Positions 44,887 to 63,999 of a stretch of 64,000 nt of DNA are shown in pieces. The stretch lies in sequence record NC_049851.1; one strand, given 5' to 3'. Below the pieces are notes generated by a model that had not been told where the DNA came from, made no database searches, and was given only the letters and a program-made list of their open reading frames with translations. The translations under genes were made by a program, and so were the position numbers. The first letter of the stretch is position 1, and every line of letters begins with the position of its first letter.

Positions 44887-45276
44887 TTATGCGCTGTTCT
44901 GCGCGTAGTACACAGACAGAAACGCAGACTCCGTAGCGGTCGACGGGTTCTGAATTGTCACCGTGTCGTACGCGTCATCGATCACCAGCACCTTGTTCAC
45001 GTTGATGGTCGTCATCAACGTGCTGATGCCAAGGGTGACTTGCACTGGTGCACTCGTCCCTAGGCAGAACGCTGTGACCTTCTTCAGGGTGATAGAGGAA
45101 CCGGGGGAAAGACCGACGGACTGTGCCGCCATGTCGTCGGTTCCGTAAATCCCATCAACTTCACCGAGTTGCTTCAGGACCAGCCTGTTGCCGCCCGTCA
45201 CGTTGAGCCGGAAGCGCAGTGTCCGGGGCTTGACCGGAGGCAGGTTCGTGATGCCGCACACTTGATTAGTAGCCAT
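44887..45276 (-). CDS. small virion-like protein, paralog of the N-domain of 48453..50459
   Basis: QSVGLSPG...VLVIDDAYDTVTIQN aligns with QTIVLKPG...QLSIDDPVDQFFITN. Confidence 0.7.
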   Translation of the reverse strand: MATNQVCGITNLPPVKPRTLRFRLNVTGGNRLVLKQLGEVDGIYGTDDMAAQSVGLSPGSSITLKKVTAFCLGTSAPVQVTLGISTLMTTINVNKVLVIDDAYDTVTIQNPSTATESAFLSVYYAQNSA

Positions 45277-45285
45277 TAGCTTCTC

Positions 45286-47175
45286 CTAGATTACCGGAAT
45301 AGGGTTGCTGACGCGCTGTGCCAACGACGTGTAGCTGATTTCCATGTTTGCTACCTCTATGGAAAGTGGCACAGAGTCTGTTGCACGCGCGATGCCGTAA
45401 GATAGAGTTGCGGCACCCGATCCCATGGCCCCCGAGTAGTTCACCACGGGCTTGGAGTCGCGCCACACCTGAAGAGTGCCCTGCGAGCCCAGCACTACGT
45501 GCATCACGTAGTTCACCCAAACGCCTCGTTGTAGAAGCGCATCGGAGTACTGAATGATGGGTATGACATCGGTGGACGCTTGGGTGCGTATCGAAAGCGT
45601 ATCCTGCGCCACGTCCACGGTCAGCGTCTTGGTCGAGGCATCGCGGTCCAGCCCGAATACAGAGCACTGGGACGCTGTGCCTATGATTCCCGGATCGATC
45701 CTGAGCGCGAAGCTGAACCAAATGTCGGTGCCCGTGTTGAGCGTGGCCGTATCGACAAGATCAGCGCGATCAACTGTTGTAAGGTCCGAAACATCACGGT
45801 CACCCGGATTCACCAAGAACTGCTGGGCCGACTGCCTGTTACGGGCCTCCGTGTAGCCACCCAGTACACCGCGCACCGCCATTTGCCGCCCCGATACTGT
45901 ACGCACAGTGGTGGGACCGAACGTCAGCGTGTAGTTGATTGGCCATACGGCTTCCGCGAATCGCGTTGCGTACGCGCTATCGACGTTCGGTGCGAGTGCA
46001 ACCACCGATTCGATGGCCAGCGATCCATACTGGGGCACCGGAATCGTATAGCCGTCTGGTGTGGCAACCACTTGTCGAGACCACACACCACCGTCACGCC
46101 CCTGAATCGCGAGCGTATAGCCGCCATTAGGAATGAACAGTTTGGTCGTGGATGCGACGCGCGTTGTCGCCACAAACGCTGTGTTGTCCGAAGCATTTGC
46201 CCCGTCCTCGATCTGCGGCTTCGAAATTTCGACGGTTATGGAGAACGGGTCCGTGTCGTTGGTTGTGGCAATCACAAGGGCTGCGGACATCTGATCGCCT
46301 GCGATAGCCGAGTTCCAGATGCTGACGCGGCGACGCCCGTATGCGGGAAGCACCGTGTACGATGCGGCTCGCGCATTGCCCGTTTTGAGCACAACGCCGG
46401 TAGCCACGCCCCCAACGTTCAGCACGTTCACGGTCGCTGCGGTTGTGAGGCCGCCACGAGTCAGCGTGGGTGCCGTGCCCGAGCCGCTGTTGAAGCTGAG
46501 CGGAACGCCTGCTGGACTTGCTTCAGTACGCGTGAACCTGATCTGGAGTTTCGGGCCGACCTGCAACACCTCCCACAGAAGTGTAGGATCGCTAACTGTC
46601 CAGCCAGTTGGTAGTGAGCCACCGTTTGCGGACGTGCCGACCAAGGCCCCTGCGAAAGTGGGGTTGGTGATCAGGTTGCTTGTACCGCGCTGAACCATCA
46701 ACCGGCCATCCTCGTCGCGATCATCAACCGTCTGGTTGAATGTCTCGAACGGGTACGCCAGATCACGATAGCGCCAGAAGCGCCCGGCCATAAAGTCTGC
46801 TTTGTACAGCGAGGTGCGCGCCGTATTCAGGTGCGCGGTGCTAACAAACATCGGATCGATGAAGAGGTTGCCCTTCGTATCGATCTTCAGTTCTTGTCGT
46901 GGGACCACGGTTCCGAGTGTGCTATCCGTAGCCACATCGGAACCACGCAATTCCCAGACTGGGGCTTTGTACAGTACGCCATCGCGATACAGGGGAACGG
47001 TGTCGTCGGCTTGTAGCGGGATCGAGGCTTGCGCCATGGAGCCCGTGTAGAGCGTGTCTAGCGCAGAACCTACCGTACCCGATTCGTGTCCGATCAGCGT
47101 AGAGCCGTTCGGCGCGCGCAGCCACGCGGCAATGCGCTGCCGGAAACTCTCGTACAGTGCTGGTATGGAGTACAT
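45286..47175 (-). CDS. receptor-binding/tailspike-like protein with C-terminal lectin or polysaccharide-lyase-like domain
   Basis: N-terminal LRAPNGSTLIG...TVGSALD neck motif; GRLMVQRGTSNLI and QIEDGA...TTRVA fibre motifs; C-terminal WVNYVMHV...GTLQVWRD. Confidence 0.65.
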   Translation of the reverse strand: MYSIPALYESFRQRIAAWLRAPNGSTLIGHESGTVGSALDTLYTGSMAQASIPLQADDTVPLYRDGVLYKAPVWELRGSDVATDSTLGTVVPRQELKIDTKGNLFIDPMFVSTAHLNTARTSLYKADFMAGRFWRYRDLAYPFETFNQTVDDRDEDGRLMVQRGTSNLITNPTFAGALVGTSANGGSLPTGWTVSDPTLLWEVLQVGPKLQIRFTRTEASPAGVPLSFNSGSGTAPTLTRGGLTTAATVNVLNVGGVATGVVLKTGNARAASYTVLPAYGRRRVSIWNSAIAGDQMSAALVIATTNDTDPFSITVEISKPQIEDGANASDNTAFVATTRVASTTKLFIPNGGYTLAIQGRDGGVWSRQVVATPDGYTIPVPQYGSLAIESVVALAPNVDSAYATRFAEAVWPINYTLTFGPTTVRTVSGRQMAVRGVLGGYTEARNRQSAQQFLVNPGDRDVSDLTTVDRADLVDTATLNTGTDIWFSFALRIDPGIIGTASQCSVFGLDRDASTKTLTVDVAQDTLSIRTQASTDVIPIIQYSDALLQRGVWVNYVMHVVLGSQGTLQVWRDSKPVVNYSGAMGSGAATLSYGIARATDSVPLSIEVANMEISYTSLAQRVSNPIPVI

Positions 47176-47184
47176 AGGAATCCT

Positions 47185-47403
47185 TTAAGTGCAAATACAA
47201 ATTACAGGTACTTTGGGGGCAACCACGGCTTCCGTGATGACTTCTACCCACTGCTTACGCATACGTGTGGACGCTGGGTAAGTAGTGAGTGAGTCGGTCA
47301 CAACCTCCACATAACTCTTACGGACTCCAGTGGAAGCCGCAAGTGTAGAATTCGTAACCACCTCACCGTACACCTTACTTACTTGTGTGGTAGGCGTAGC
47401 CAT
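47185..47403 (-). CDS. 72 aa triple-repeat protein
   Basis: Three copies of [VM]xKx[YW]xEV[VI]T. Confidence 0.7.
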   Translation of the reverse strand: MATPTTQVSKVYGEVVTNSTLAASTGVRKSYVEVVTDSLTTYPASTRMRKQWVEVITEAVVAPKVPVICICT

Positions 47404-47405
47404 GA

Positions 47406-48443
47406 TTAGTCACCCATACCGACCTGTGCCGCGTTGACGCTGGTAACAGTCCATGCGCTACCTGCGCTGTCCCGCGTGAACACATCGGAGTACACAACGT
47501 TCGTGCCCACCAGCGAGCGCACTGCACCCGGGACTACGGTTCCGTTCGACTTTATCTGGGCCGTAACCGAGTGCTGAGCGTCTGCCCCGGGGTTCGAGGC
47601 ACAGGTGTTGACGACAACGGCGTTTACGTTTTGGGCTGCATATGGAAGCGCGCTCATCGTGTACAGATCAGACTTACCTGTCGTCGCGTCTGTCAGCGTC
47701 GCGGTCCCGGTCCACGGCTGCGATGCCACCTGCCAGTTGGCCCCGGCGCTGGGCGCGAATTGAGTGCTATCACCAGCACCAGCAGGATTCATTAGGCCGA
47801 TACGACGCGCGCCCACCGGAAACGTGTTGAAATCGGTGCCTGTGGTGTCCCAGATCAGGAAGTCGTCCAGATACGACAGGTTGTTGCTGGGTGTGTAATC
47901 GGTGCCGATAAACAGCGTCGGTATCACCTGTGCGGGATGATTGCTCAGGTTGTACGTACCACTGAATTGCTGAACACCATCCACGTAGGCCGTCACCTGA
48001 GAGTTGGCCCCATTCAGCGTGAACGAGACTTCGATCCAGTGATAGCCGTCACCCAAATACGTGGTGCCAGTTGCTACAGGCGTCGTCGTGTTGTTGTGCA
48101 GCGTCAAATAGCTGCCGTTGTACGACAGTAGCGTAGCGTTGGGGAGGCTGACCAAACAGTACTTGGGTAGATTGCTACCGCCACCGCCGTTCAGACGCAG
48201 CCGCCACCAACCAGCCACGTAGAACGTAGCGCCCGAGGCCACGCCTGCGCCCGGAAGATCACAGCGTAGCGAGGCCGCGTATCCCGCTGTGTTGTTGCAG
48301 AAGGCACGGCCGCCGAAGCGGCCGTTCGTGGGGTCGAGCCCGGCATTGCCCGCAGGCAGCGCAATCTGCTTGTACTTGCCGCTGTTTGCAACGTCGGTGA
48401 TTGTCGCGTACGAATCCCAGCCTTCAGAAAATAGGAGTGCCAT
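47406..48443 (-). CDS. ConA/LamG-like lectin-fold virion protein, paralog 1
   Basis: FSEGWDSY N-terminus; YHWIEV...AYVDG; YLDDFLIWD; shared C-domain ending WTVTSVNAAQVG. Confidence 0.7.
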   Translation of the reverse strand: MALLFSEGWDSYATITDVANSGKYKQIALPAGNAGLDPTNGRFGGRAFCNNTAGYAASLRCDLPGAGVASGATFYVAGWWRLRLNGGGGSNLPKYCLVSLPNATLLSYNGSYLTLHNNTTTPVATGTTYLGDGYHWIEVSFTLNGANSQVTAYVDGVQQFSGTYNLSNHPAQVIPTLFIGTDYTPSNNLSYLDDFLIWDTTGTDFNTFPVGARRIGLMNPAGAGDSTQFAPSAGANWQVASQPWTGTATLTDATTGKSDLYTMSALPYAAQNVNAVVVNTCASNPGADAQHSVTAQIKSNGTVVPGAVRSLVGTNVVYSDVFTRDSAGSAWTVTSVNAAQVGMGD

Positions 48444-48452
48444 ATTCTTTCC

Positions 48453-50459
48453 TTATCGCGTGCCGTTGAGCGTGATCGATACGCCGCTAAAAGTCGTGTC
48501 CGTGACGCCCGCAGCGAATGTCATCACGTCGCCTGCTGCAAACGTGACCGGGTTCGATATGTTCACGGTGCCAGTCGACGAGCCCGCAGGATACGTGATG
48601 TCACCCACCATTACACCGTTCTTGTAGATGCCTATGATCACGATGCCCGTCGTAGCCACCAGCGAACTCGACAAGTTTCCGGTGATGCCGGAGAGTCCCG
48701 CAGCGAACGCCACGCTACGCGCGAAGATCGTTCGGTAGAACGTAGCCCCAGCCACCGGAGTTCCCGGATAGAACGTCATGATGTCGTACGGCTGCGGCGG
48801 TATGGTTGCGGTGGGCGGCGCTGTCCATGTACCGTCTTCCCGCAGATACCTCGTGGTGCCAGCCGTCGAACCCGGGCTCGGAACAAGACCGTTTTTGGCG
48901 TTGACACCGGACGGACCGAACGTCGGAACGTTCATCTGGATCGACACGTTGTCGTTGCCGTCGGCCCCTACTATGATGTTGCTGTCGTATGCCACGATCT
49001 TGCGGAAACGCGTCTTGCCCGAGCCGTCGTTTGCAGCCGACATAACCGACGTGCCTGACGGTGCCGTGTTGTCGTAGGGCACTAGGTTCACGTTGCCGTT
49101 GCCGTCTGGCGACGCCCCGTTGACGGTCTTGACAGTTCCCGATGCCGTGATGTTGACCGTACCGTCTGCGGCCATCGACATGCCAGTCCCTAGCTTGATG
49201 CCACCGAGGACCGTACTCGATGCTTGTGGCAGCGTGTACGGGGCCGGTATAATAGGCAGTCCTAGCAAGTCTGAGTAGTTGCCAGTCTTAGCCACGGTGG
49301 CCAGATTCTGAACGTCGCTGGCTCGAATGGTCAACACATAGTTGCCTGTGTTGTCTGGGCCCGTCCCATTGATGCTAAGCACACCCAAGTTTGTGATCGT
49401 ACTGTTCGTATAGTCGATCCCACGGCCTGCCGTGATGCCTTGACCCAAGTTCGAGCGTATATCGTCGAGCACCGCCTGAAGGTTCTTGCCGTAAGTAGTG
49501 CCAACGAGTGCTGCGCCACCCGCACTGCCCAGATCGGATTCGGCTACAACGTCCGCTATCCGTAGTGCGTTGATCTCGACCGTGACGAGCGGCGCTCCTG
49601 CCACCACCATGGCCGCGACTTCTGGGGCAAGCACGATTTGAATGCCGCCCGTGCCGTCATAGGCCAGTCGTTCGAGATATGCACCCATCAAATAAACGTC
49701 AACGACGTTCGGGGTAAAGCCACCGGGTATCACGAACGTGCCCTGACCATCGGCGGTCGCGTACACGATCTTAATGGTACGTCGGTTCAGGTCGCCACTC
49801 ACTATCAGGTTATCGTTAGGATCACGATCGATTGTGATGTTGGCACCTGCTACCAGTGTTCGGAACTTCATGCGCGCGTCATGTGCGCCGGAGTCCGAGA
49901 TCAACGAGTTGCCGGTTCCGGGGTGTGCATCGACAGCCTCGATGGTGAGACTGCCGTCCCCCATGGGGTACATGTCGTTGATACGAAGGACGCCCGTGTT
50001 ATTGACCCTGATGGTGCTGCCCGTGTTGTCGATGCCGATGCCGGGGCCGCCCTCGATCACCACCTCGCCTGTCTTGTTGTTGACACTGGTGACAATACCC
50101 TTGATGGGCATTGGATCAGTAGTCGAGTGAACGACGAATGTGATCTGCACCACTGCGGTGTCAGTGTCCGAGCGGTTGGTGATGAAGAACTGATCTACCG
50201 GATCGTCAATGGACAGTTGCTGATCGACCGCTACTGCTGTTGGGGTTCCGGTTCCTACCACAGTCGACACAAACACAGGCTTGTCTGTGCTGATCGTGAG
50301 CGCCGAGAACCCAACATCCGCATCCCATTGCTGTCCCGGCTTCAGAACAATCGTTTGGTTGATGGTCTGATTGGCGTAGTACTTTGCCACCAGATTCTCG
50401 TTGATGACTGGAACACCGGAGCCGCGAGTGCCTGTCTTGATTACGAAGCTGTCGCCCAT
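48453..50459 (-). CDS. modular fibre protein with C-terminal 'AAGD' adaptor-like domain
   Basis: VxSVNxxxG repeats; LPQASSTVLGGIKLG; C-terminal PYDI...FAAGDV...ITLNGTR. Confidence 0.78.
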   Translation of the reverse strand: MGDSFVIKTGTRGSGVPVINENLVAKYYANQTINQTIVLKPGQQWDADVGFSALTISTDKPVFVSTVVGTGTPTAVAVDQQLSIDDPVDQFFITNRSDTDTAVVQITFVVHSTTDPMPIKGIVTSVNNKTGEVVIEGGPGIGIDNTGSTIRVNNTGVLRINDMYPMGDGSLTIEAVDAHPGTGNSLISDSGAHDARMKFRTLVAGANITIDRDPNDNLIVSGDLNRRTIKIVYATADGQGTFVIPGGFTPNVVDVYLMGAYLERLAYDGTGGIQIVLAPEVAAMVVAGAPLVTVEINALRIADVVAESDLGSAGGAALVGTTYGKNLQAVLDDIRSNLGQGITAGRGIDYTNSTITNLGVLSINGTGPDNTGNYVLTIRASDVQNLATVAKTGNYSDLLGLPIIPAPYTLPQASSTVLGGIKLGTGMSMAADGTVNITASGTVKTVNGASPDGNGNVNLVPYDNTAPSGTSVMSAANDGSGKTRFRKIVAYDSNIIVGADGNDNVSIQMNVPTFGPSGVNAKNGLVPSPGSTAGTTRYLREDGTWTAPPTATIPPQPYDIMTFYPGTPVAGATFYRTIFARSVAFAAGLSGITGNLSSSLVATTGIVIIGIYKNGVMVGDITYPAGSSTGTVNISNPVTFAAGDVMTFAAGVTDTTFSGVSITLNGTR

Positions 50460-50502
50460 AATTATCTCCGTTATGATGCTCTGCTAACTAAAATTACACA
50501 CC

Positions 50503-50535
50503 AAAAGAAAAACCCGGCTCGGGGCCGGGTTCTTC
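50503..50535 (-). terminator. intrinsic terminator
   Basis: Minus strand AGAACCCGGC-cccga-GCCGGGTTTTTCTTTT. Confidence 0.85.
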
Positions 50536-50617
50536 TGCGTGCCGCCTATTAATGTACCCATTGCATAGATACACTAAAATTGGCTGTTCGGTTATTGCCA
50601 ATACAGGGCCCTATTCG

Positions 50618-51112
50618 CTACGCGGTTGGCAATTCTGCGTTTACGGTCATGCCAAAACTACAGGTTCCGAAGCCTCCTAGTAGTTGGTTACCGGCAGGCA
50701 AGTTCAGGCGCACTGCGTTGTTCGTCTGTGAGGCCACGGTCGGATTGCCTGAGCTAAGGTTGGATACAGACACACCGCTGAACGCAAGCGTCGGGTTGCT
50801 GATACGCTTGTACTCGTACTGCGCCGTCATCTGCGGAACCTGTCCGTTGCCTACCTGTCCGGACCACGCGAAAGGTGTTCCAGAGAACGCTTCGTAGTAG
50901 AACAGACAGTCGTTGAGCATGGACGCTAGGTCGCGAAACTCGTAGCCCGTAAATTGCGGCCCGAACTCAAGCTGAACTTCAGACAGCAGCGCCGTGAACG
51001 TGCCGGGAGACGCAGCAGTAGCAATCTGCAATCTCAGGTAGTGGTTGGTCCCCAGAGTTTTGCCCACAACCGAGGGCAGCGCAAACGTCTGCTGACACCG
51101 CGTCCACGTGTA
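50618..51112 (-). pseudogene. headless tail-fibre C-terminal fragment
   Basis: Frame open from an in-frame TAG (51113-15): YTWTRCQQTFALPSVVGKTLGTNHYL...VQLEFG..FTGYEFRDLASMLNDCLFYYE (fibre-tip motif). No ATG or SD at its 5' end. Confidence 0.6.
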
Positions 51113-51620: not shown

Positions 51621-51649
51621 AACCTTCTCCATGTTCTCTGGCTGCAATA

Positions 51650-51975: not shown

Positions 51976-52341
51976 TTAACTCGGTGTGAACCAAGTAATA
52001 GTGGTCATTGGTTTAGCTGGGTCCAAGGTTGTCTGCGCTATGACCTCCAGCGTAACACCACTGTCTTGTGTGGTATACGGAAGGCCCGCTATGACTTCCA
52101 TGGATACACCATAATCGTTTGCCGGAATTAGGCCGGACGCCAACACCTCCATTTGAACCGCATAGTCATTCGCATTGAGCGGGGGTATGATCAGGACTTG
52201 TCGTGCTACAGCCTGACTCTTAACCGCCGATGACTGCGACAGTAGAACCTGCCGCGCTACTGCCCTAGCAGTAGACGCGGGAGATTGAACCGTGAGTAGC
52301 TGTCTGGCTAGGGCTTGGGCCTTTACTGGGTTACCTGCCAT
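51976..52341 (-). CDS. 121 aa repeat protein
   Basis: 3x A[LV]ARQ[LV]L, then 3x D[YS]xVx[ML]EV[LI]A. Confidence 0.72.
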   Translation of the reverse strand: MAGNPVKAQALARQLLTVQSPASTARAVARQVLLSQSSAVKSQAVARQVLIIPPLNANDYAVQMEVLASGLIPANDYGVSMEVIAGLPYTTQDSGVTLEVIAQTTLDPAKPMTTITWFTPS

Positions 52342-54617: not shown

Positions 54618-55760
54618 TTAACGAGAAGTCTGGCCGAACTCTCCGGCATTCAGACTGGCTGTTGTCCAAGGGTTCGTGCCGTCTGTTTCTGCCACCGATA
54701 GATAGCGCGACGGGCCGTTCGATGTTGTCATTTGCGTCACACCGGACGAGCTTGATGTTTTGAAAGACCCCTGAATGTTCTGATACCGATTCGAGTTGCC
54801 ACGCATCACGACCGCACGCACATCGGATACCGCAGGCACATTCCATTTGTACGTATCGGTCTGGCCGGTGGCGCTTGCGGTCACGTAGTTGGCACCGGTC
54901 GTATCGGTGGCCGATTGCCAGTTGGGTTCGGCACCAGATGGAGTCCACTGGGTGACCGATCCGTTGCCCGTTGCCGAGACTGCGTAAATACGGCGTGCCG
55001 TGATAGCGGGTTCCGTTTCCGGGGTCGGCCACACACCAGCACCGAGAGGCCACGCGGCGTCCGCACCCGAAACGTTCTGAACCACGAGGTCATCAACGAA
55101 GTAGCTGATGAAGTTCGAGGCGAAGAACTTGAGGCGGTTCGCGATCTGCCCGGCCGTGAAGTTGTCTGCACTCCACGTCACCGGAATATCCTGCTGCAAC
55201 GTCGTGCCGTTGATCGTGTACGTGGCAGTCAGGACAGCCGACGATGCAGTCGATGTCGTGCTGTAGTACGAGAACTGAAGCTGTACCCAGTAGTACGTGT
55301 TCAACTGGATGTTGAAGTTGTACGGAGAACTGGTCGGGCTGTTGATGTTGGTGACGAACTGTAGGTTGGTGCCGCCCGACGACGAATTGCTGATGTTCAG
55401 GAGCGGATACCACGAGCCCGGAACGCCTGCGGTTCCGAGTGCGAGCAACGTGCCAGACCCCGGGTTCATCGTGTTGATGTTCAACCAGAAGTTGAAGGCG
55501 AACGCGGCCTTACCGCTGGTGGCAGTGTTCCCGCGAATCATCTGCATGGTCGACGGGAACTGGTACTCGAAGCCCGAGGTCAGGGACGCTGGGGCCCCCG
55601 ACGACGGGAACGTGAGAGCGGCACCGCCAAATGCGCCAGCCGACAAGTTCACCTGTCCGGCTATGGAACTGTTGGTCACGAACCATGGGTAGTTTGCGGC
55701 AAGCGTGCCTGAAGGGTAGATGTCAAACCCCTCGGCCGCTGCAATAAATTGTGCTGCCAT
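54618..55760 (-). CDS. lectin-fold paralog 3
   Basis: AEGFDIY N-terminus; YYWVQL...YTING; FVDDLVV; shared C-domain ending WTTASLNAGEFG. Confidence 0.72.
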   Translation of the reverse strand: MAAQFIAAAEGFDIYPSGTLAANYPWFVTNSSIAGQVNLSAGAFGGAALTFPSSGAPASLTSGFEYQFPSTMQMIRGNTATSGKAAFAFNFWLNINTMNPGSGTLLALGTAGVPGSWYPLLNISNSSSGGTNLQFVTNINSPTSSPYNFNIQLNTYYWVQLQFSYYSTTSTASSAVLTATYTINGTTLQQDIPVTWSADNFTAGQIANRLKFFASNFISYFVDDLVVQNVSGADAAWPLGAGVWPTPETEPAITARRIYAVSATGNGSVTQWTPSGAEPNWQSATDTTGANYVTASATGQTDTYKWNVPAVSDVRAVVMRGNSNRYQNIQGSFKTSSSSGVTQMTTSNGPSRYLSVAETDGTNPWTTASLNAGEFGQTSR

Positions 55761-55770: not shown

Positions 55771-57066
55771 TTATTGCCACGTGCCACGTATGGTGATGGT
55801 GATGAGCGAAACGTTCGTCGTCGCAAACTGATAGGACAACTGATCGCCTGCTGCGTAATTGGTTGTGCTACCCGTGCTCGTAAACGAGTTGCCGTTCACC
55901 GTGTCGATGTTGAGCGTGCCGACCTGCGTACCAGTATTCGGGGTGGCCGCCGGATACTTCATGATGCGTATGGTAGCGGTAGTGCCGCTGATCAGCCGCA
56001 CGTTTGCCACCGAGTTCGCCCAGTTCTGCGGGAACTGGCACGGGTCCGTGAACATGTAGAACACTTCGTTCACGATGTTCGGATTGCCCTGAACGTTGAC
56101 TGGCAGACGCGCGATGCTCGGGTTGGGCGGTTGGTTCAGCAGGTCCGTGTAGGAGCCAGTGAGCGCAACCGTCGACAGCGTACCCGACGCGAGGTTACCT
56201 GCGGTCGCTGCGGTGTTCGTGAACTGCACGCCACCCAGCGTTGTGGTAGTTGCCTTGGGCAGCGAATACGGCGTAGGCTTGTTCGACAGGTCGTTGTAGT
56301 TGCCGGACGTGGCGACGGTCGCAAAGCCCGCGATGTCGGTAGCCGTCAGCGTGACCGTGCCAGTCTTACCGTTCACGGACGTGACGTTGGAGCCAGAGTT
56401 AGCGATCTTCGTCCACACGTTGTTCGACACCAGCGCCAAGTCACCGACAGCCCACGTGCTGATACCGTCGATTGATGTGGAGCCCGCAACCGATACCACG
56501 TAGTACGAACCGTTTGCCTGCGCAGTGCCACCAGCAACACCACCGTTTGCGAGAACCGGGTTGTTCGCGTTAGCGTCCCAGTTCCCCTTGTACGACAGGC
56601 CCCCCGTGATAGACGACGGCAGATATTTTGATGCGACAGTGCCCGACGGTCCTGACAGCAGGTCGGTTGGTAGACCAACGTCTGCGGCCGTAAGCGTCAC
56701 GGTGCCCGAGCGCGAGTTGACGCTTACGACACCAGCGTTGGTGATATTGCCGTTCGAATCCACAGCCAGACCGCCGCTGGCCGGAACCATCACGCCACCG
56801 AGCACCGCTGCCGATGCTTTCGGGAGTACGTAGTTGCCAGCCGATGGTTTGTTGGTCAGGTCGTTGTAGTTGCCGGTGAACGCCACCGTGGACAGGTCAC
56901 CCGGACCCAGACCGATCTCCTGAATAGCACCCGTGTTGTCGAGTGTGTACAGTTTTCGGTCTGGGAAGTTGATGGCCAACTGGCCGGTGAGTATCTGCGC
57001 CGTGGTGGGGCGAGCACCAGCGGTCAGCAGCCGTGGGTGCTGAACCGGGATGTTAAGAGCAGTCAT
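55771..57066 (-). CDS. modular fibre protein with C-terminal 'AAGD' domain
   Basis: GQLAINFPDRKLY N-domain; VVSVNSRSG; YKGNWDANAN...GDLAL domain; YAAGDQL...ITIRGTW. Confidence 0.78.
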   Translation of the reverse strand: MTALNIPVQHPRLLTAGARPTTAQILTGQLAINFPDRKLYTLDNTGAIQEIGLGPGDLSTVAFTGNYNDLTNKPSAGNYVLPKASAAVLGGVMVPASGGLAVDSNGNITNAGVVSVNSRSGTVTLTAADVGLPTDLLSGPSGTVASKYLPSSITGGLSYKGNWDANANNPVLANGGVAGGTAQANGSYYVVSVAGSTSIDGISTWAVGDLALVSNNVWTKIANSGSNVTSVNGKTGTVTLTATDIAGFATVATSGNYNDLSNKPTPYSLPKATTTTLGGVQFTNTAATAGNLASGTLSTVALTGSYTDLLNQPPNPSIARLPVNVQGNPNIVNEVFYMFTDPCQFPQNWANSVANVRLISGTTATIRIMKYPAATPNTGTQVGTLNIDTVNGNSFTSTGSTTNYAAGDQLSYQFATTNVSLITITIRGTWQ

Positions 57067-57079: not shown

Positions 57080-59404
57080 TTAGCCGATGACGCCGCCATC
57101 GATAGTCAAGTTCTGCAAGAACGAAAGCGGAACTGCCGCGTCGCCCGTTGTTGGTGTGGTCAGCCCATTCAGGACTTGGCTACCCATGCTCAGCGGGCCC
57201 GTCATGGTCACGTTGCCCGAGACGGGCACCGCGTTCACGTTTGCAGCCGTGAGCGACACGTTACCGCTGCCGTTCGGGCTGACGCCGTTGACTGTCGACA
57301 CGGTGCCTGCGGGAATCGCGGCGGTGATCGTGACCAAGCCGTTTGCTTCGGCCAACGTAACGTTTTGACCAGCAACCAGCGACTTGATGATCGCAGAGTT
57401 TGCGGGCGGGTTGGATTCGACGAGCAGTACAGCGCCTGTGCCTGTTTGGCCCGTGACCGACGTTATCGCGTTAGCGATGGACGGAACAACAGACCAGCCC
57501 AAGTTCTGGCGCATGTAGCCGTTGCCATCGTTCGGGGCCTCCGGAACGCCGGTCCCCGAAATCTGGATGGAGTTGCCGGTGTTCGACAGCGAAATCGAGG
57601 GGCCTGCCGTGAACGTGATAGCGCCAGTCAGCGCGCCGGACGTTCCTGCCGTGATGGACGAAACTCCACCCGTGGCAGTCGACGCGATGGAAAGGTTCCC
57701 GTTCGCGTCCGGCGTGATCGTCACGCCCGATCCAGCAACCAGCGTCTTCAGCTTAATGTTACCGGTCGTCGACCCGTTGTTGCTGATGAGCGACGTGCCT
57801 GTTGCAGCGTTGTTGTCCGTGGCCTGCACAACTACCACACCGGTTTGTCCGGACACCGAAGCAACAGCACCAGTTGCCGAGATCGTGCCGTCCGCCGCGA
57901 TGCTGATGCCCGGACCGGCTTTGACGCCGCCTAGGTTCACGCCGGTCGGTGCCGCAAGCGACAGGTTACCTGTTCCGTCCACAGTCAGACCGGCCTTGAC
58001 AATCACACCACCGATGGTGGTGGTCGTAGCAGGGTTCAGCACTTGGTTCGCAGCAATCGTCAGCGTCTTGTTGTCGCCAGATGGCGTGATCGTGACGTTG
58101 GAGCCTGCGGCCAGCGACTTAATCGTCGCGATACCACCCGCAGTCCCGTTGTTGTCCACCAGACCAGTGCCAGTGCCTTCGTTGTTCACTGCCGTCAGCG
58201 CGCCCGAGGTTGCTGTCGAACTGATGGTGATGTTGCCGTTAGCGTCCGTGCCAAGCTGAATCAAGTTACCAGCAACCAGCGTCTTCAGCTTAGCGTTGCC
58301 AGTTGTTGCACCTGCGTTCGCGATCAGCGACGTGCCAGTTGCAGGATTGTTGTCTGTAGTACTGATAACAACTATGCCAGTCTGGCCCGAAACCGATTGC
58401 ACGTTACCCTGCGCATTGATTTGCAGGTTGCCGTTAGGGTCAGCAGCCAGTGTCACGTTGGAGCCAGCGACCAGCGTTTTCAGCTTGATGTTGCCGGTCG
58501 TCGCGCCACTATCCGTAATCAGCGACGTACCGGTTGCCCCGTTGTTGTTCGTAGCCTGAATGATAACGGCACCAGTTTGTGCGGACACCGAAGAAACCGG
58601 AGCCGGGACTGGTGCCGGGACTGAGATCGTGCCGTCAGCCGTCACGTTGATGTTGGCACCGATCTTGACTGCGCCAAGAACTGTGCTCGATGCCACGGCC
58701 GATACAATCTTGCCATCGGCACTCAACTGGATGCCCTGACCTTGCGGTACATACACACCGCCTAGGTGGGCCGCGTCCTGTCCCGCTGCCGGAAGAACGT
58801 ACTGGTTTGCGCCCGTCAGGACGAGGTTGCCCGATCCGTCTGGTGCGATGGTGATGCCCGAGCCCGCGACAAGCATCGCTAGACTCAAATTACCGGTTGT
58901 GGACCCATCGTTCTTGATGAGCGACACGCCGTTAGGAGCATTGTTGTCGACAAGCTTCACTACGACGTTGCCCTGCGAGTCCGGCGTCTGGTTGTTGACC
59001 GACCGAACGTCACCGGCAGTGTAGTTGGCCGTCGTCGTAGCCCCGTACACGGACCCATCGTTTGCGATGAACGTGGGGCCGCCCGGGTACTCGACACCGT
59101 TACGCCACACCTTCGAGCGTGTCGGCAGGCCCGAGTTGGGGTCCGTTACTTCGTAGAACAGATCGATTGCAGCACCGTCGATGATGCCTTGGCAGATCGC
59201 GGTGTACGGAAGGGCAAAGCGCCACCGGCTCTGGCCGATGTCGTAGATGTACGCGCCCTTGTCACGACCCGGGCCCTCTGTGGACGCCAAGATGACTGCT
59301 TCGGCCGTAGGGTCGATCGGCAGCGTGTCCACAGTAGGTGCCACCACCGTGTTCGCCACCCCGTTTCGGTGTAGCGTCAGGGAGTAGTAAAAAGTGCTGT
59401 CCAT
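57080..59404 (-). CDS. long fibre protein with tandem ~62 aa repeats
   Basis: 4+ copies of VxSVSGQTG...DNN..TGTSLI...TTGN.KLKTLVAG; ends in an IDGG motif. Confidence 0.82.
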   Translation of the reverse strand: MDSTFYYSLTLHRNGVANTVVAPTVDTLPIDPTAEAVILASTEGPGRDKGAYIYDIGQSRWRFALPYTAICQGIIDGAAIDLFYEVTDPNSGLPTRSKVWRNGVEYPGGPTFIANDGSVYGATTTANYTAGDVRSVNNQTPDSQGNVVVKLVDNNAPNGVSLIKNDGSTTGNLSLAMLVAGSGITIAPDGSGNLVLTGANQYVLPAAGQDAAHLGGVYVPQGQGIQLSADGKIVSAVASSTVLGAVKIGANINVTADGTISVPAPVPAPVSSVSAQTGAVIIQATNNNGATGTSLITDSGATTGNIKLKTLVAGSNVTLAADPNGNLQINAQGNVQSVSGQTGIVVISTTDNNPATGTSLIANAGATTGNAKLKTLVAGNLIQLGTDANGNITISSTATSGALTAVNNEGTGTGLVDNNGTAGGIATIKSLAAGSNVTITPSGDNKTLTIAANQVLNPATTTTIGGVIVKAGLTVDGTGNLSLAAPTGVNLGGVKAGPGISIAADGTISATGAVASVSGQTGVVVVQATDNNAATGTSLISNNGSTTGNIKLKTLVAGSGVTITPDANGNLSIASTATGGVSSITAGTSGALTGAITFTAGPSISLSNTGNSIQISGTGVPEAPNDGNGYMRQNLGWSVVPSIANAITSVTGQTGTGAVLLVESNPPANSAIIKSLVAGQNVTLAEANGLVTITAAIPAGTVSTVNGVSPNGSGNVSLTAANVNAVPVSGNVTMTGPLSMGSQVLNGLTTPTTGDAAVPLSFLQNLTIDGGVIG
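57680..59010 (-). repeat. coding tandem repeat units in fibre gene
   Basis: 24-bp identity CCAGCAACCAGCGTCTTCAGCTTA at 57732-57755 and 58269-58292. Boundaries approximate. Confidence 0.85.
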
Positions 59405-59409
59405 AGTTC

Positions 59410-60081
59410 TCACCACGTGAATGCGGCGTTAGCCGAGTTGAGGCTTGGCATGCGTTGTTGAACAAGCTGTGTCAACGCTTCGCCCTGAGCCCCGTTTATT
59501 TTTTGTGTAACCGCCGTGTATGCGTCCTGATCTGCGAGCGCGCTCAGTCCGTTCTGGCTCCAGTACCAACCGGCACTCATGAACAGATCGGCGGCCTGTG
59601 TCACAAGGTCGGGATTGCTGACGACGCGCGTATCCCCGTAGATGGCTTGGCTGTATGCTGTGTAGTTCGAGCGCCCCGTCAGGTGGAATGCACCTCGCCC
59701 GCGAAACAGCCAGCCATCACCAGAAGCCACGTTGCCGTTGCCCATGCGCGAGGCATAGACCAGATTCGCGAGCTTCTGCGGGTTGCCAACATAGCTCGGC
59801 GCATACGCCTTGCTGGTATCGGCTTGGTTCATGGTGAACCGCGAAGGCCACACGGCGACCAGCCGTTCCGGCGTCGTGTAGTTCAAGTTCTCCACGAGCT
59901 TCGAGAAGCCAGCCGTCTCGTACGCGGCTTGCGCCATGAAATAACGCACACGGCGCGGACTCGCGTCGATACCGAATTTTGCCATCGCCGCGTTTGCTGC
60001 GTCTGCCATCACCTGAAGCTGTGTGGCCGGAATTTGTGGCGCAAATTTTGCGAGTTGCGCGCTCGTGATTGCGTATGCCAT
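59410..60081 (-). CDS. endolysin, GH19 chitinase-like muramidase
   Basis: FMAQAAYETAGF..LVENLNY; DGWLFRGRGAFHLTGRSNY; SAGWYW; VTQKING. Confidence 0.92.
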   Translation of the reverse strand: MAYAITSAQLAKFAPQIPATQLQVMADAANAAMAKFGIDASPRRVRYFMAQAAYETAGFSKLVENLNYTTPERLVAVWPSRFTMNQADTSKAYAPSYVGNPQKLANLVYASRMGNGNVASGDGWLFRGRGAFHLTGRSNYTAYSQAIYGDTRVVSNPDLVTQAADLFMSAGWYWSQNGLSALADQDAYTAVTQKINGAQGEALTQLVQQRMPSLNSANAAFTW

Positions 60082-60545: not shown

Positions 60546-60546
60546 G

Positions 60547-60906: not shown

Positions 60907-60945
60907 GATCGTGCTCCATGTCAGTCACTCCTAGATTAACCCGTT

Positions 60946-60984: not shown

Positions 60985-61005
60985 GACCGGCAACAGGAGA
61001 AAACT

Positions 61006-62219: not shown

Positions 62220-62221
62220 AG

Positions 62222-62259
62222 AAAAACCCCACATGGATTGCGGTCCATGTGGGGTTTTT
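62222..62259. terminator. bidirectional terminator
   Basis: AAAAACCCCACATGGA-ttgcgg-TCCATGTGGGGTTTTT. Confidence 0.92.
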
Positions 62260-62262
62260 GTG

Positions 62263-63999
62263 TTACGCGGAGCCCTTCAGGGTGAAGGCCGCGCTTGCGA
62301 GTGCTGTGTCGGCTGCGAGCGGGCCGACAACCAGCAGCGTGTCGCCTGCTGCCAGATTAAGGGCTGACGCCATCGTAAAGGTGGGCCGATTTGCGCCTAC
62401 CGCCCAGTTGATGGTGCCTACCGTCGTTGCCGTCGTGCTACCAGCCGGGATGCGCTGGATGTTGAACGTGGTAGCCGCAGCCGCGCCCGTCTGCGCATAA
62501 CCAGAACTGCCGGTCAAGCCAGCCGGAAGTGTGACTGCACGCGTGATCGGCATTTGCAGCACGATCTGCGAAGCCGTCATGGTGCCGCTCACACCGCCTG
62601 CAATGTCGTACGCCTGTGCAGGAGAGGTGCCGCTAACCTTGATCCAGTTCGTGTTGAACGCCAGCACCATATCCCCGACAGCCCAGCTACTCGTACCGTC
62701 TAGGCTGGTAGTACCGGCCACCGTTACTCGGTAGGCCGAACCGTTGCCCGGAACAGTCTGGTACACTTGCTGGCCTGCGGCCTGACGGAATGCCGTATCG
62801 ATGGTTTGCTGACCGCCCGTCAACAGCGCCGTGTTCGGGTCGATGGTGCCAAGACCCTGATACTGGGACACGTGGTTAGCGCTGGCATCCCAGTCACCGA
62901 TCACGTACACGGCCCCGAGAGGCAGTTGTGCGCGAGGCACGCGACCATACACGTAGCCATCTGTGGGGCCCGCGCTGCCCGTGTTCTGGTCAAGCGTGGC
63001 CACGCCTCCGGGCTGACCCTTCTGCGTAGTGGGTATAGCACCAACGTCGGAGGCGCTGAGCACTATGTTGGCATTGCTGTAACCGTTGACTGTTTGAATC
63101 TGGGTCTTCAGCAGGCCCGTTGAGTCGACGGTTAGACCCGCGCCCACGATCACGGCACCCAGTGTCGTGGTCGTCGCAATCGGAATCGAGCCGTTAGGAA
63201 CCGTGTTCCATGCACCCCACGTGTTGTTGACGCACGCGCGGTAGGCCATGCGCGTGCCCGATTTCCACGTTTGCACCACATCACCGCCAGTTCCCGTTGT
63301 CGTGAACGGCGCGACTTCTAGGATAGCAGCATCGGTTGCTGCGTTCGGCTTATTGAAGAGTGAGCTAACATCGGCAGAAAGCACAAAAAACAGGCCGGTC
63401 TGCTTATAAGCATTCATGTCAGCAGCGGCCGGTATTCTTGTTGGATGAACAAGACCAACTGTGGTATCCTGCACGACCACGTTTCCGTTTGCGTCGGGAC
63501 CCACACCATTCACAGTCATCACGGGGCTGATGCCTAGGTCGATGGTGCCGTCCCCAGCAATCGTGATGTGGCCGTTGGTCGGGGCCTTCACACCACCAAG
63601 CGTTGTGGTAGTGGCCACCGGCAGCGTGTACGGCACCGGCTTGTTTATCAGGTCGTTGTAGTCACCCGTGGCCGCTACCCGCGCCGCATCCGGAATGTCC
63701 CCGATCTTCAGGTTCACGTCCCCGGTCTTTCCGTTGACGCTGGTAACCGGGAAGATGCTCGAATTCACGTCCAGCACGCCTTGCGGAGTGATGGTCAGCG
63801 TGTTGCCCACGATCACGGCACCAAGATCAGTGTGCGTTGCAATCGGCAGGTTCGGAATCGTGGTGCTAAGTGCCTGTCGGCCGAACACCACGATTTTGTC
63901 ACCGACCGCAGGCAACTGCGCCAGCGGAGACGAAAACTGGAGCGTGGCGTCGGTCGAGGTCGTGATGACGCCCGTGACGTAGCGACAGAAGCTGAAGTT
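62263..63999 (-). CDS. modular fibre protein (5' end beyond window) with C-terminal 'AAGD' domain
   Basis: Frame open to the window edge; IPIAT..LGAVIVG repeats; VTSVNGKTG; DWDASAN...VAGTTSLDG..WAVGD; AYDI...LAAGDTL...FTLKGSA. Confidence 0.82.
   Translation of the reverse strand, partial: NFSFCRYVTGVITTSTDATLQFSSPLAQLPAVGDKIVVFGRQALSTTIPNLPIATHTDLGAVIVGNTLTITPQGVLDVNSSIFPVTSVNGKTGDVNLKIGDIPDAARVAATGDYNDLINKPVPYTLPVATTTTLGGVKAPTNGHITIAGDGTIDLGISPVMTVNGVGPDANGNVVVQDTTVGLVHPTRIPAAADMNAYKQTGLFFVLSADVSSLFNKPNAATDAAILEVAPFTTTGTGGDVVQTWKSGTRMAYRACVNNTWGAWNTVPNGSIPIATTTTLGAVIVGAGLTVDSTGLLKTQIQTVNGYSNANIVLSASDVGAIPTTQKGQPGGVATLDQNTGSAGPTDGYVYGRVPRAQLPLGAVYVIGDWDASANHVSQYQGLGTIDPNTALLTGGQQTIDTAFRQAAGQQVYQTVPGNGSAYRVTVAGTTSLDGTSSWAVGDMVLAFNTNWIKVSGTSPAQAYDIAGGVSGTMTASQIVLQMPITRAVTLPAGLTGSSGYAQTGAAAATTFNIQRIPAGSTTATTVGTINWAVGANRPTFTMASALNLAAGDTLLVVGPLAADTALASAAFTLKGSA

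What the first reader, a model, noticed from the sequence alone, without database searches (positions are those of the whole stretch)
44887..63999. Plug-and-socket fibre/lectin network: repeated [fibre with AAGD end] -> [lectin paralog(s)] -> [tiny triple-repeat protein] cassettes
Three fibres (48453, 55771, 62263) end in a homologous ~115 aa domain (..G(T/D)I/L....AAGD.(L/M)....(I/F)T(L/I).G). On the - strand, 55771 is followed by two lectin-fold paralogs (54618, 52356) and then a small triple-repeat protein (51976). Likewise 50459 is followed by lectin paralog 48443 and then a small triple-repeat protein (47403), then a tailspike-like RBP. The fibres share shaft modules (VxSVNG repeats, LGGV knots, WDA.AN domain). 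The repeated order suggests the AAGD domain is a socket for interchangeable lectin heads, capped or chaperoned by the repeat peptides. That would give a branched, multivalent adsorption apparatus built from a small domain kit. This is the strongest candidate for an undescribed system in the window.
Basis: partly seen in the sequence, partly recalled or inferred. Interest (0 to 1): 0.75.

Follow-up and report, generated by a model that had tools for sequence, protein, structure and literature searches.

The report
Conserved phage tail-fibre tip gene cassette
The repeated gene order in this Burkholderia jumbo phage is real: a fibre ending in a C1q-like head, then lectin-fold proteins, then a small tandem-repeat protein form an undescribed cassette found in many unrelated phages, probably part of the host-attachment apparatus.

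Summary
The window is Burkholderia phage BcepSauron, a 262-kb jumbo myovirus (100% identity).

**Observation: confirmed**
- Three fibres end in one homologous ~120-aa domain carrying the AAGD motif.
- Two of them are followed by ConA-like paralogs, then by a small protein of 3 or 3+3 tandem units.

**Recurrence**
- The same three-part cassette occurs in BCSR5, phiCbK, Achromobacter phage AchV4, GTA-like Burkholderiaceae prophages and metagenomic phages.
- Of 30 lectin cassettes, 24 have an AAGD-ending gene upstream and 29 have a repeat protein adjacent.
- Starting from AAGD genes, 23 of 56 loci have a lectin downstream. All 23 also have a repeat ORF after it.

**Structure and virion evidence**
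- The predicted AAGD domain is a jelly-roll head. Its best match is the distal domain of the phage 7-7-1 long tail fibre (TM 0.70), then C1q/TNF heads.
- The lectin is a two-domain ConA-like protein with no solved relative. Its family has about 25,000 clusters.
- Published virion mass spectrometry of AchV4 detected the AAGD protein and two lectins, but not the repeat protein.

**Interpretation: partly supported**
- The functional link is strong, but docking is only inferred.
- My reading: lectins are accessory binding subunits of AAGD-headed fibres, tethered by the repeat units.

**Verdict**
- New variant of a known kind.

The parts
48453..50459 (-). Fibre A (668 aa, BcepSauron_274), first gene of cassette A
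   Evidence: Shaft segments shared with the other fibres.
48456..48824 (-). AAGD head domain of fibre A (residues 546-668)
   Evidence: Domain model E 1.7e-27. AF2 model pLDDT 89.5, a 10-strand jelly roll. Best PDB match is the 7-7-1 tail fibre 9rkv, TM 0.70. It is 37-43% identical to the prophage 237-aa family but only 26% and 20% to its own two paralogs.
47406..48443 (-). Lectin A (345 aa), two-domain ConA-like protein
   Evidence: phrog_2448 E 1.4e-18. Laminin_G_3 E 3.9e-5, below the Pfam cutoff. AF2 pLDDT 90.2. Foldseek results.
47185..47403 (-). Repeat protein A (72 aa): 3 tandem units plus a hydrophobic C-terminal tail with Cys residues. Unannotated in GenBank.
   Evidence: The start codon lies 2 nt after the lectin stop codon.
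45286..47175 (-). 629-aa protein after cassette A, with a possible ConA-like or polysaccharide-lyase-like C-terminal domain. Membership of the cassette is uncertain.
   Evidence: PF14099 E 1.7e-5, below cutoff. No PDB hit. Absent at this position in BCSR5.
44887..45276 (-). 129-aa protein, last gene of the transcription unit before the hairpin at 44847-44883. Role unknown.
57080..59416 (-). 778-aa repetitive fibre upstream of cassette B, without an AAGD end. GenBank places its start at window 59404.
55771..57066 (-). Fibre B (431 aa, 'long tail fiber'), first gene of cassette B
   Evidence: 42 close orthologs in metagenomes.
55774..56151 (-). AAGD head domain of fibre B (residues 306-431), a divergent subtype
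   Evidence: hhalign against the other subtype: probability 92.4%, E 5e-7. Matches the C-terminal end of phrog_9625.
54618..55760 (-). Lectin B1 (380 aa)
   Evidence: BLASTP against lectin A, E 2.5e-8. Lectin profile E 4.5e-69 (this sequence is part of that profile). 54% identical to the BCSR5 ortholog.
52356..54608 (-). Lectin B2 (750 aa): an N-terminal extension of about 450 aa followed by the lectin (residues 458-744)
   Evidence: Lectin profile E 6.5e-21. phrog_30887 and phrog_2448.
51976..52341 (-). Repeat protein B (121 aa): 3 units of one type followed by 3 of a second type
   Evidence: GGAG lies 8 nt before the ATG. BCSR5 ortholog E 2e-23.
50618..51067 (-). Remnant ORF (149 aa), equal to the C-terminal part of a 372-aa fibre gene that is intact in BcepSaruman. 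One deletion relative to Saruman.
   Evidence: 99% identity to the C-terminal 149 residues of the BcepSaruman_272 product.
50506..50536 (-). Terminator-like hairpin (13-bp stem) separating the unit that holds cassette B from the unit that holds cassette A
   Evidence: a consensus match only.
62263..63999 (-). Fibre C (BcepSauron_288, 811 aa, runs off the window). Tail-collar-type N-terminus, AAGD head at 62266-62634, no lectin cassette after it.
   Evidence: PF12571 E 4.9e-4, below cutoff.

Best explanation
These genes encode the distal, host-binding end of the phage's tail fibres, built from a conserved three-part cassette.

(1) The AAGD domain is a C1q/TNF-like jelly-roll head that closes the C-terminal, distal end of trimeric fibres.

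(2) The ConA-like proteins are virion-borne accessory subunits that bind, or possibly cleave, host glycans. Their N-terminal half is variable and their C-terminal half is conserved. They have no anchor domain of their own, so they depend on AAGD-headed fibres.

(3) The small protein is a string of short beta-strand units, about 17-21 residues apart, ending in a hydrophobic tail. I propose that each unit grips one lectin subunit, with one unit type for each diverged lectin paralog. The string would then tie three copies of each lectin together at the three-fold fibre head.

On this reading cassette A carries one lectin species and cassette B carries two, which would give a multivalent adsorption apparatus.

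**Shown:** homology, gene order, recurrence across phages, predicted folds, and virion presence of AAGD and lectin homologs in AchV4.

**Inferred:** that the AAGD head is a trimer, which component contacts which, the stoichiometry, and that the lectins bind sugars.
For: **Context**
- The region is 100% identical to BcepSauron and lies in its fibre and lysis region.

**Recurrence, starting from lectins** (30 cassettes)
- 24 have an AAGD-ending gene upstream.
- 29 have a tandem-unit protein adjacent.
- In the first 17 loci (2,601 ORFs), the only ORFs with two or more strict motif hits were those next to lectin genes.

**Recurrence, starting from AAGD genes**
- 23 of 56 loci have a lectin downstream.
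- In 21 of those 23 the lectin starts within 22 nt of the AAGD stop codon.
- All 23 have a repeat ORF directly after the lectin(s).
- Lectins nearly always come with AAGD, but AAGD comes with lectins only about 40% of the time. That fits the lectin being the dependent partner.

**AAGD head**
- AF2 model pLDDT 89.5.
- TM 0.70 to the C-terminal 'triple jelly roll' of the trimeric long tail fibre gp015 of phage 7-7-1, then C1q, cerebellin and TNF-type heads.
- One BCSR5 fibre joins collagen triple-helix repeats (Pfam E 2e-16) to an AAGD head, the same layout as C1q.

**Lectin**
- AF2 model pLDDT 90.2 with two beta-sandwich domains.
- ConA-like matches in the PDB.
- Full-length matches (TM 0.76-0.87) to phage proteins, including an AchV4 'virion structural protein'.
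- The C-terminal half is more conserved than the N-terminal half: 39% versus 27% mean pairwise identity.

**Virion evidence**
- AchV4_0024 carries the AAGD domain, and 0025 and 0026 are lectins. All three were detected by LC-MS/MS of virions, at 91%, 75% and 36% coverage (PMC7996906).

**Repeat units**
- The usual count is 3 units per single lectin gene: Sauron A, phiCbK, L007, L012-L019, L024-L026, L028-L033 and L037.
- The number of unit types equals the number of diverged lectin paralogs in Sauron B, BCSR5 B, L021 and AchV4. Cassettes whose lectins are at least 41% identical have one type.
- Units occur naturally fused to a discoidin domain (L007), CBM-like domains (L028, L030, L031), an Ig-like domain (L017) and a second lectin (L005).
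Against: - No physical contact between any two components has been shown or predicted here.
- The AchV4 repeat protein (578 aa) and its third lectin were not detected in virions.
- In phiCbK only the large tail protein that carries the AAGD end is flagged as virion-associated. The lectin and the repeat protein are not.
- The rule of three units per lectin fails in L008 (3 lectins, 5 units), L020 (2 lectins, 3 units) and AchV4 (3 lectins, more than 20 units).
- 59% of AAGD-ending fibres have no lectin nearby.
- Some lectin cassettes have no AAGD gene within reach.
- In BCSR5 one lectin pair precedes its neighbouring AAGD fibre instead of following it.
- Sugar binding by the lectins is untested.
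Confidence: 0.5

Rival explanations
1. The repeat protein is a non-structural assembly chaperone. It would act like the tail-fibre assembly proteins encoded after fibre genes in P2, Mu, lambda and T4. Its tandem strands would transiently template folding or trimerisation of the lectins or the AAGD head, and it would not be part of the virion.
For: - It is the last gene of the cassette, the usual place for fibre chaperones.
- The AchV4 repeat protein was not found in virions although the AAGD protein and two lectins were.
- phiCbK gp316 is not flagged as virion-associated.
- The start of ORF 47185-47403 lies 2 nt after the lectin stop codon, which suggests coupled translation.
Against: - It has no similarity to any chaperone family in Pfam, PHROGs or NCBIfam.
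- The units are often fused to discoidin, CBM-like, Ig-like or lectin domains. Those fit surface display better than a transient chaperone.
- Small or low-copy proteins are easily missed by virion mass spectrometry.
Confidence: 0.25
2. The three gene types are independent adsorption proteins. They sit together only because fibre genes cluster and move as blocks. The AAGD head is itself the receptor-binding domain, and the lectins attach elsewhere, for example to the baseplate.
For: - 33 of 56 AAGD-ending genes have no lectin nearby, including fibre C of this window.
- L008, L010 and L020 have lectins but no nearby AAGD gene.
- In 7-7-1 the matching jelly-roll domain is simply the fibre's distal end.
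Against: - The lectins have no recognisable anchor domain. The jelly roll starts at residue 2.
- Lectin genes start 0-22 nt after the AAGD stop codon in 21 of 23 loci.
- The AAGD domain is the only part kept in front of the lectins, whatever it is attached to: a 237-aa protein, a 1,412-aa central tail protein, myovirus fibres or a coiled-coil protein.
- The AAGD head of fibre A is closer to prophage heads than to its own paralogs, and the same holds for lectin A. That points to transfer of head plus lectin together.
Confidence: 0.2
3. The ConA-like proteins are enzymes (polysaccharide lyases or glycanases) that degrade capsule or LPS, not lectins. This concerns their activity and is compatible with any of the assembly models above.
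For: - There are weak PF14099 polysaccharide-lyase hits in relatives and in the 45286-47175 product.
- The Pam4 homolog is annotated as a polysaccharide lyase.
- PDB fold matches include an alginate lyase, a GH131 enzyme and a beta-1,3-glucanase.
Against: - All hits to enzyme families are below their thresholds.
- The same fold search matches non-catalytic carbohydrate-binding and lectin domains equally well.
- No catalytic residues could be checked.
Confidence: 0.25

Closest known systems
Long tail fibre gp015 of Agrobacterium phage 7-7-1 with its garland protein gp014 (PDB 9RKV; PMC12796354)
   Same: The C-terminal 'triple jelly roll' (residues 473-587) of a trimeric myovirus fibre is the best structural match to the AAGD domain (TM 0.70-0.71, E 1e-6). 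Small accessory proteins bind the lower parts of the fibres.
   Different: There is no sequence-level similarity. gp014 forms homodimers around the baseplate, and its sequence was not compared with the lectins or repeat proteins. Searches from three lectins at E<=1e-3 returned no Agrobacterium phage.
T-even fibre-tip adhesin system (gp37 with gp38, as in T2 and S16); comparison from my own knowledge
   Same: A separately encoded protein, whose gene follows the fibre gene, sits on the distal tip of a trimeric fibre and provides receptor specificity. One adhesin chain meets a three-fold tip.
   Different: Neither gp38 nor gp37 families were hit in Pfam, PHROGs or NCBIfam. The folds differ and there is no tandem-unit protein. 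Attachment is not shown here.
C1q/TNF-family globular heads
   Same: Jelly-roll head at the C-terminus of a trimeric stalk. One BCSR5 AAGD fibre even has collagen repeats before the head.
   Different: TM is only 0.45-0.50 and identity about 10%. There is no sequence relation. The trimeric state of AAGD is inferred, not tested.
Branched receptor-binding complexes of phages CBA120, G7C and PhiKp24; comparison from my own knowledge plus the PhiKp24 preprint listed
   Different: In those phages, branching uses N-terminal adaptor domains of tailspikes. None was found here. The proposed connector in this cassette is a string of short repeat units.
phrog_2448 / Pfam Laminin_G_3 (ConA-like lectin/glucanase superfamily)
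   Same: The lectins match phrog_2448 (E 1e-18) and have the ConA-like jelly roll.
   Different: phrog_2448 has no assigned function. The second, conserved C-terminal sandwich domain and the linked genes are not described in any library searched.

Membership tests
ConA-like lectin/glucanase superfamily (Pfam Laminin_G_3, PF13385) | Jelly-roll beta-sandwich fold | tested here: met
   AF2 model pLDDT 90.2. 196 PDB matches at E<=1e-3, all of the top 50 at probability >=0.89 and most of them ConA-like domains.
ConA-like lectin/glucanase superfamily (Pfam Laminin_G_3, PF13385) | Score above Pfam's gathering cutoff (27.6 bits) | tested here: inconclusive
   Lectin A scores 24.3 bits, below the cutoff. 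The L012 homolog scores 29.4 bits, above it.
ConA-like lectin/glucanase superfamily (Pfam Laminin_G_3, PF13385) | Carbohydrate binding or catalysis | not testable with these tools
   No ligand or active-site analysis was possible.
phrog_2448 (phage proteins of unknown function) | Full-length profile match | tested here: met
   Lectin A: E 1.4e-18 over 3-343 of 345. Lectin B2: E 3.6e-18 over 521-744. Lectin B1 gave no PHROG hit.
C1q/TNF-like trimeric head | Compact 10-strand jelly roll at the C-terminus of a fibrous stalk | tested here: met
   AF2 model. Fold matches. The domain is always at the extreme C-terminus.
C1q/TNF-like trimeric head | Homotrimer about a three-fold axis | not tested
   Only single chains could be modelled. 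The trimer is inferred from the 7-7-1 fibre and from the collagen repeats in a BCSR5 fibre.
Tail-fibre assembly chaperones (Tfa / gp38 / Caudo_TAP type) | Match to a known chaperone family | tested here: not met
   The repeat proteins have no significant hit in Pfam, PHROGs or NCBIfam; the only matches at E<=0.1 are far below cutoff and lie in fused extra domains or are unrelated families.
Tail-fibre assembly chaperones (Tfa / gp38 / Caudo_TAP type) | Absent from the mature virion | tested here: inconclusive
   The AchV4 repeat protein was not detected by LC-MS/MS. There are no data for BcepSauron.
Branched tailspike complexes (CBA120 / G7C type) | N-terminal adaptor or branching domains on the binding proteins | tested here: not met
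   No such family was hit in any cassette protein. The lectins start directly with the jelly roll.
P2 gpH-type baseplate-attached fibre (Pfam Phage_tail_fib, PF12571), for fibre C | N-terminal tail-collar domain | tested here: inconclusive
   E 4.9e-4 and 20.5 bits against a cutoff of 23. This part lies outside the window.

The most novel reading that the evidence does not exclude
The tandem units act as an address code. Each short beta-strand unit recruits one subunit of its matching ConA-like protein, so a single small gene sets which binding heads, and how many, are strung onto a C1q-like fibre tip. If so, this would be a general, portable way of building multivalent host-binding tips. It would be shared by myoviruses, siphoviruses, podoviruses and prophages, across a lectin family of about 25,000 clusters.
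Probability: 0.25. Interest if true: 0.8.

Novelty: new variant of a known kind. Interest (0 to 1): 0.64.

Why it matters
- Tail-fibre tips decide which bacteria a phage can attach to, yet many fibre-region genes have no assigned function.
- This cassette accounts for eight genes in this jumbo phage.
- It also links a very large uncharacterised lectin family to tail fibres. That family has 25,028 cluster representatives, 9,245 of them at E<=1e-30.
- The same holds for a fibre-head family common in Burkholderiaceae prophages, with 553 proteins, all called 'hypothetical'.
- It gives annotators a simple rule: a fibre ending in the AAGD head, followed by a ~340-aa ConA-like protein and a small tandem-unit protein, marks an adsorption module.
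- It raises a concrete structural question about how a single chain with three repeats meets a three-fold fibre tip.
- The head, lectin and repeat protein appear to move together between a jumbo myovirus and small prophages of the same host family.

Tried and rejected
- **PDB sequence searches.** No informative hit for lectin A, the lectin profile, the 237-aa AAGD family, the AAGD profile, or the products of 45286-47175 and 52356-54608; the best was E 0.019 to an arabinanase CBM-like domain for the lectin profile. Fibre B hit only head-fibre shaft repeats weakly.
- **Locus search with the broad lectin alignment.** The search for related loci failed because no stretch was conserved enough. A single query found only the phage itself. 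A narrower alignment worked.
- **129-aa protein as a copy of fibre A's N-terminus.** I thought 44887-45276 might be a free-standing copy. BLASTP gave no match, only a weak hit (E 1e-3) to a BCSR5 127-aa protein. Dropped.
- **'Tailspike-like' for 45286-47175.** No support.
- **A strict rule of three units per lectin gene.** It fails in L008, L020 and AchV4. I kept only the looser link between unit types and diverged paralogs.
- **A disulfide between lectin and repeat tail.** Cys6 of the lectin and the penultimate Cys of the repeat tail co-occur in 10 of 12 loci, but lectin A of this window has Ser6. Left as a hint.
- **Literature.** No paper was found describing the cassette.
- **Complex prediction.** Not possible.

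Full report
**Identity and context**

Window 44887-63999 is 100% identical to Burkholderia phage BcepSauron (MK552141, positions 168887-187999). BcepSauron is a 262,653-bp jumbo myovirus of the genus Sarumanvirus. The region is 97% identical to BcepSaruman.

The region is a minus-strand block. In order of transcription it holds:
- a LydA-type holin, a 154-aa protein and a GH19 endolysin;
- a 778-aa fibre;
- fibre B (431 aa), lectin B1 (380 aa), lectin B2 (750 aa) and repeat protein B (121 aa);
- a 95-aa protein, a DUF3175 protein and a 149-aa fibre remnant;
- a strong hairpin at 50506-50536;
- fibre A (668 aa), lectin A (345 aa) and repeat protein A (72 aa);
- a 629-aa protein, a 129-aa protein and a 17-bp bidirectional hairpin at 44847-44883.

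Fibre C (BcepSauron_288, 811 aa) lies beyond a plus-strand 5'-3' exonuclease gene and runs off the window.

- The three fibres end in a homologous domain of about 120 residues containing AAGD.
  - A versus C: BLASTP E 2e-3. A BCSR5 fibre bridges them at E 4e-11 and 4e-5.
  - The B-type end is joined by profile-profile comparison only: hhalign probability 92.4%, E 5e-7.
  - Nothing else in the 64-kb window matches the domain model.
- The three lectin-fold proteins are paralogs. Lectin B2 carries the lectin at residues 458-744, behind an extension of about 450 residues.
- The small proteins are true tandem-repeat proteins.
  - Protein A has three units, 19-21 residues apart.
  - Protein B has three units of one type and three of another, 17 residues apart.
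  - Self-similarity is 20-40 times that of shuffled sequences.
- The 72-aa ORF is not annotated in either GenBank record. It differs from its Saruman copy by three nucleotides and one residue, and BCSR5 has an annotated homolog.
- The fibres share shaft segments.
- Two points of the finding do not hold. Fibre C has no lectin cassette. The 629-aa protein shows nothing tailspike-like.

**The cassette recurs far outside this phage**

BCSR5, a 227-kb Burkholderia phage, has both cassettes. Its second lectin pair and a five-unit repeat protein precede an AAGD fibre instead of following one.

I then collected lectin relatives by protein search, IMG/VR, GTDB genomes and GenBank phages. Each locus was scanned with profiles for the lectin and the AAGD domain and with a motif for the units.
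- Of 30 lectin cassettes, 24 have a gene ending in an AAGD domain upstream. One more has it directly downstream.
- 29 of the 30 have a protein with the tandem units next to the lectin gene(s). L009 has only one unit, and Pam4 is unclear.
- Among the 2,601 ORFs of the first 17 loci, the only ones with two or more strict motif hits were those next to lectins.

The carriers are very diverse:
- siphovirus-type prophage tail modules of the GTA/phiJL001 kind in Paraburkholderia, Cupriavidus, Caballeronia and others. The cassette there follows the Rcc01698-like host-specificity gene and precedes the lysis genes;
- the giant siphovirus phiCbK. Its virion tail protein gp317 ends in a discoidin-like stretch (identified by eye, no family test) plus an AAGD domain (HMM E 7.6e-12), gp316 is a three-unit protein and gp315 is the lectin;
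- the Casjensviridae phage AchV4;
- a contig encoding an SU10-type adaptor protein, probably a podovirus (L010);
- contigs of other jumbo phages (L005, L019, L020).

The reverse test starts from AAGD proteins. Three look-ups gave two cassettes with lectin plus repeat protein, and one variant with other proteins and a four-unit small protein. An IMG/VR scan found 150 relatives, of which 80 loci were kept. Of these, 56 have at least 2.5 kb downstream.
- 23 of the 56 (41%) have a lectin within 4 kb downstream.
- In 21 of those 23 the lectin starts within 22 nt of the AAGD stop codon.
- All 23 have a repeat ORF directly after the lectin(s).
- The generic repeat detector flags 5.6% of control ORFs.

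So lectins nearly always come with an AAGD-ending gene, while AAGD-ending genes come with lectins in about two cases out of five.

**Family sizes**

- The lectin profile finds 25,028 cluster representatives at E<=1e-3 among 1.84 billion. Of these, 9,245 are at E<=1e-30, and the 150 best listed are 310-374 residues long, nearly all matched end to end.
- The 237-aa AAGD family has 553 members within the searched length range, all called hypothetical.
- No Pfam, NCBIfam or PHROG family with a function covers the AAGD domain or the repeat proteins.

**Predicted structures**

Lectin A was modelled with pLDDT 90.2 as two beta-sandwich domains.
- Against the PDB it matches only generic ConA-like jelly rolls, including carbohydrate-binding modules, lyases, glucanases, calreticulin and the lectin-like subdomains of several binding proteins. 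TM is 0.3-0.5, so there is no solved relative with the two-domain build.
- Against predicted viral structures it matches whole proteins at TM 0.76-0.87. These include a protein named 'virion structural protein' in AchV4.
- The C-terminal half is the conserved half: 39% versus 27% mean pairwise identity.

The AAGD domain of fibre A was modelled with pLDDT 89.5 as a ten-strand jelly roll.
- Its best PDB matches are the three chains of the phage 7-7-1 tail fibre (9RKV; TM 0.70-0.71, E 1e-6). C1q, cerebellin, Pgp3 and TWEAK-type trimeric heads follow at TM 0.45-0.5.
- The 7-7-1 paper describes that domain as the C-terminal 'triple jelly roll' (residues 473-587) of the trimeric long tail fibre, whose N-terminus anchors it in the baseplate. 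Small garland proteins bind the lower parts of the fibres (PMC12796354).
- One BCSR5 fibre has collagen triple-helix repeats before its AAGD head, the same layout as C1q.

**Virion evidence**

In AchV4 the cassette is:
- 0024: 240 aa, AAGD domain at E 1.5e-13, with a weak DUF2793 match at its N-terminus;
- 0025, 0026 and 0027: lectins, at E 2e-26 to 2e-16;
- 0028: 578 aa, made almost entirely of tandem units of three types.

The published LC-MS/MS of purified virions lists 0024 (91% coverage), 0025 (22 peptides, 75%) and 0026 (14 peptides, 36%). It does not list 0027 or 0028 (PMC7996906, Table 1). I found no proteomic data for BcepSauron.

**The repeat proteins**

- The common form is about 74 residues: a short lead, three units 19 residues apart, and a hydrophobic tail whose penultimate residue is Cys.
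- The units also occur at the C-terminus of proteins with a discoidin domain (L007), a ~190-aa CBM-like domain (L028, L030, L031, L033) or a 430-aa domain (L014).
- They occur at the N-terminus of proteins with an Ig-like domain (L017), a second lectin (L005) or a long extension (L010, AchV4_0028).
- One lectin gene usually goes with three units.
- Where a cassette has mutually diverged lectins, the number of unit types equals the number of lectins: Sauron B, BCSR5 B, L021 and AchV4. Where the lectins are at least 41% identical there is one type: L020, and two of the three lectins in L008.
- The count of units is not strictly three per lectin.

**How it most likely works**

Shown:
- the three gene types are a conserved unit in fibre regions;
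- AAGD is a fibre C-terminal head by predicted fold;
- homologs of the head protein and of the lectins are virion proteins in one phage.

Inferred:
- AAGD forms the trimeric distal head.
- The lectins lack any anchor domain and almost always follow an AAGD gene, so they are accessory binding (or glycan-cleaving) subunits that depend on such heads.
- The tandem units each hold one lectin subunit through strand pairing. The small protein would then staple three copies of each lectin species at the three-fold tip, or string more of them in the long forms.
- Cassette A as a whole looks acquired. Its head is 37-43% identical to prophage heads but only 20-26% to the phage's other two heads. Lectin A is up to 57-61% identical to relatives elsewhere but only 26% to lectin B1.

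Rivals, set out with evidence in the Rival explanations section:
- the small protein is a chaperone that is absent from virions;
- the genes are merely neighbours and the AAGD head is the receptor binder itself;
- the lectins are enzymes.

**Comparison with known systems**

In principle this resembles a fibre tip with a separately encoded adhesin (the T-even gp37/gp38 type), branched receptor-binding complexes, and the 7-7-1 fibre with its garland proteins. None of the defining sequence families of those systems was found. A tandem-unit connector has no counterpart that I know of or could find. I therefore rate it a new variant of a known kind, namely an accessory receptor-binding module on tail fibres.

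- All contacts are inferred.
- The locus sets are biased towards the canonical lectin subfamily and contain some close relatives.
- The AAGD and lectin profiles were partly built from the window's own proteins, so only matches in other loci count as independent.
- The terminator and ribosome-binding-site calls are consensus matches only.
- One gene of the element is broken relative to its sister phage. ORF 50618-51067 is what remains of a 372-aa fibre gene after one deletion. That deletion also removed two whole fibre genes present in BcepSaruman.
- A MAG locus (L027) shows a lectin with a probable frameshift (not verified), which I did not analyse further.
- Slip: in my private reasoning I recalled from memory a few short motif fragments, for Pfam DUF2793 and for fibre N-termini, as leads. 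None was put into a tool call, a note or this report. The DUF2793 lead was tested only through Pfam.

Noticed in passing
window 47185-47403 (-): A 72-aa ORF that is conserved in BcepSaruman and BCSR5 is missing from the GenBank annotation of both BcepSauron and BcepSaruman.
   Followed up: yes
window 50618-51067 (-); L002 8732-11545: This 149-aa ORF is the C-terminal remnant of a 372-aa fibre gene that is intact in BcepSaruman. Saruman has that gene plus two further fibre genes here (371 and 184 aa). One deletion separates the two phages, so the spot between the cassettes turns over fibre genes.
   Followed up: partly
window 44887-45276 (-): This gene is annotated 'transcriptional regulator' in BcepSauron, but no family supports that. 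It has a weak match (E 1e-3) to a 127-aa BCSR5 protein that also lies next to a fibre gene.
   Followed up: partly
window 59410-60906 (-): The lysis genes sit directly upstream of the fibre genes, on the same strand and with no gap: a LydA-type holin, a 154-aa protein that Saruman annotates as an antiholin, and a GH19 endolysin. In many prophage loci the cassette also abuts the lysis genes.
   Followed up: no
window 51135-51647 (-): A DUF3175 protein (E 5.8e-6, at the Pfam cutoff) lies between the two cassettes. BCSR5 has two copies in its fibre region.
   Followed up: no
L035 5001-8308 (Cupriavidus taiwanensis prophage); also L046, L047, L049, L051: A variant cassette: an AAGD protein, then proteins of 130, 319 and 250 aa that do not match the lectin profile, then a ~130-aa protein with four tandem units of another type and a similar hydrophobic tail. 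The tandem-unit idea may extend beyond the lectins.
   Followed up: partly
L003 15380-17167 (BCSR5): This fibre combines a tail-collar-type N-terminus, collagen triple-helix repeats (Pfam E 2e-16) and an AAGD head. It is a phage fibre with the domain layout of C1q.
   Followed up: partly
lectin N-termini and repeat-protein C-termini in 12 loci: Cys at position 6 of the lectin co-occurs with a penultimate Cys in the repeat protein's tail in 10 of 12 loci. phiCbK lacks both. Lectin A of this window has Ser6 while its partner keeps the Cys. A possible disulfide, unproven.
   Followed up: partly
window 16001-20000: AT skew is unusually high here (0.30-0.35, against about 0.05-0.15 elsewhere in the window).
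   Followed up: no
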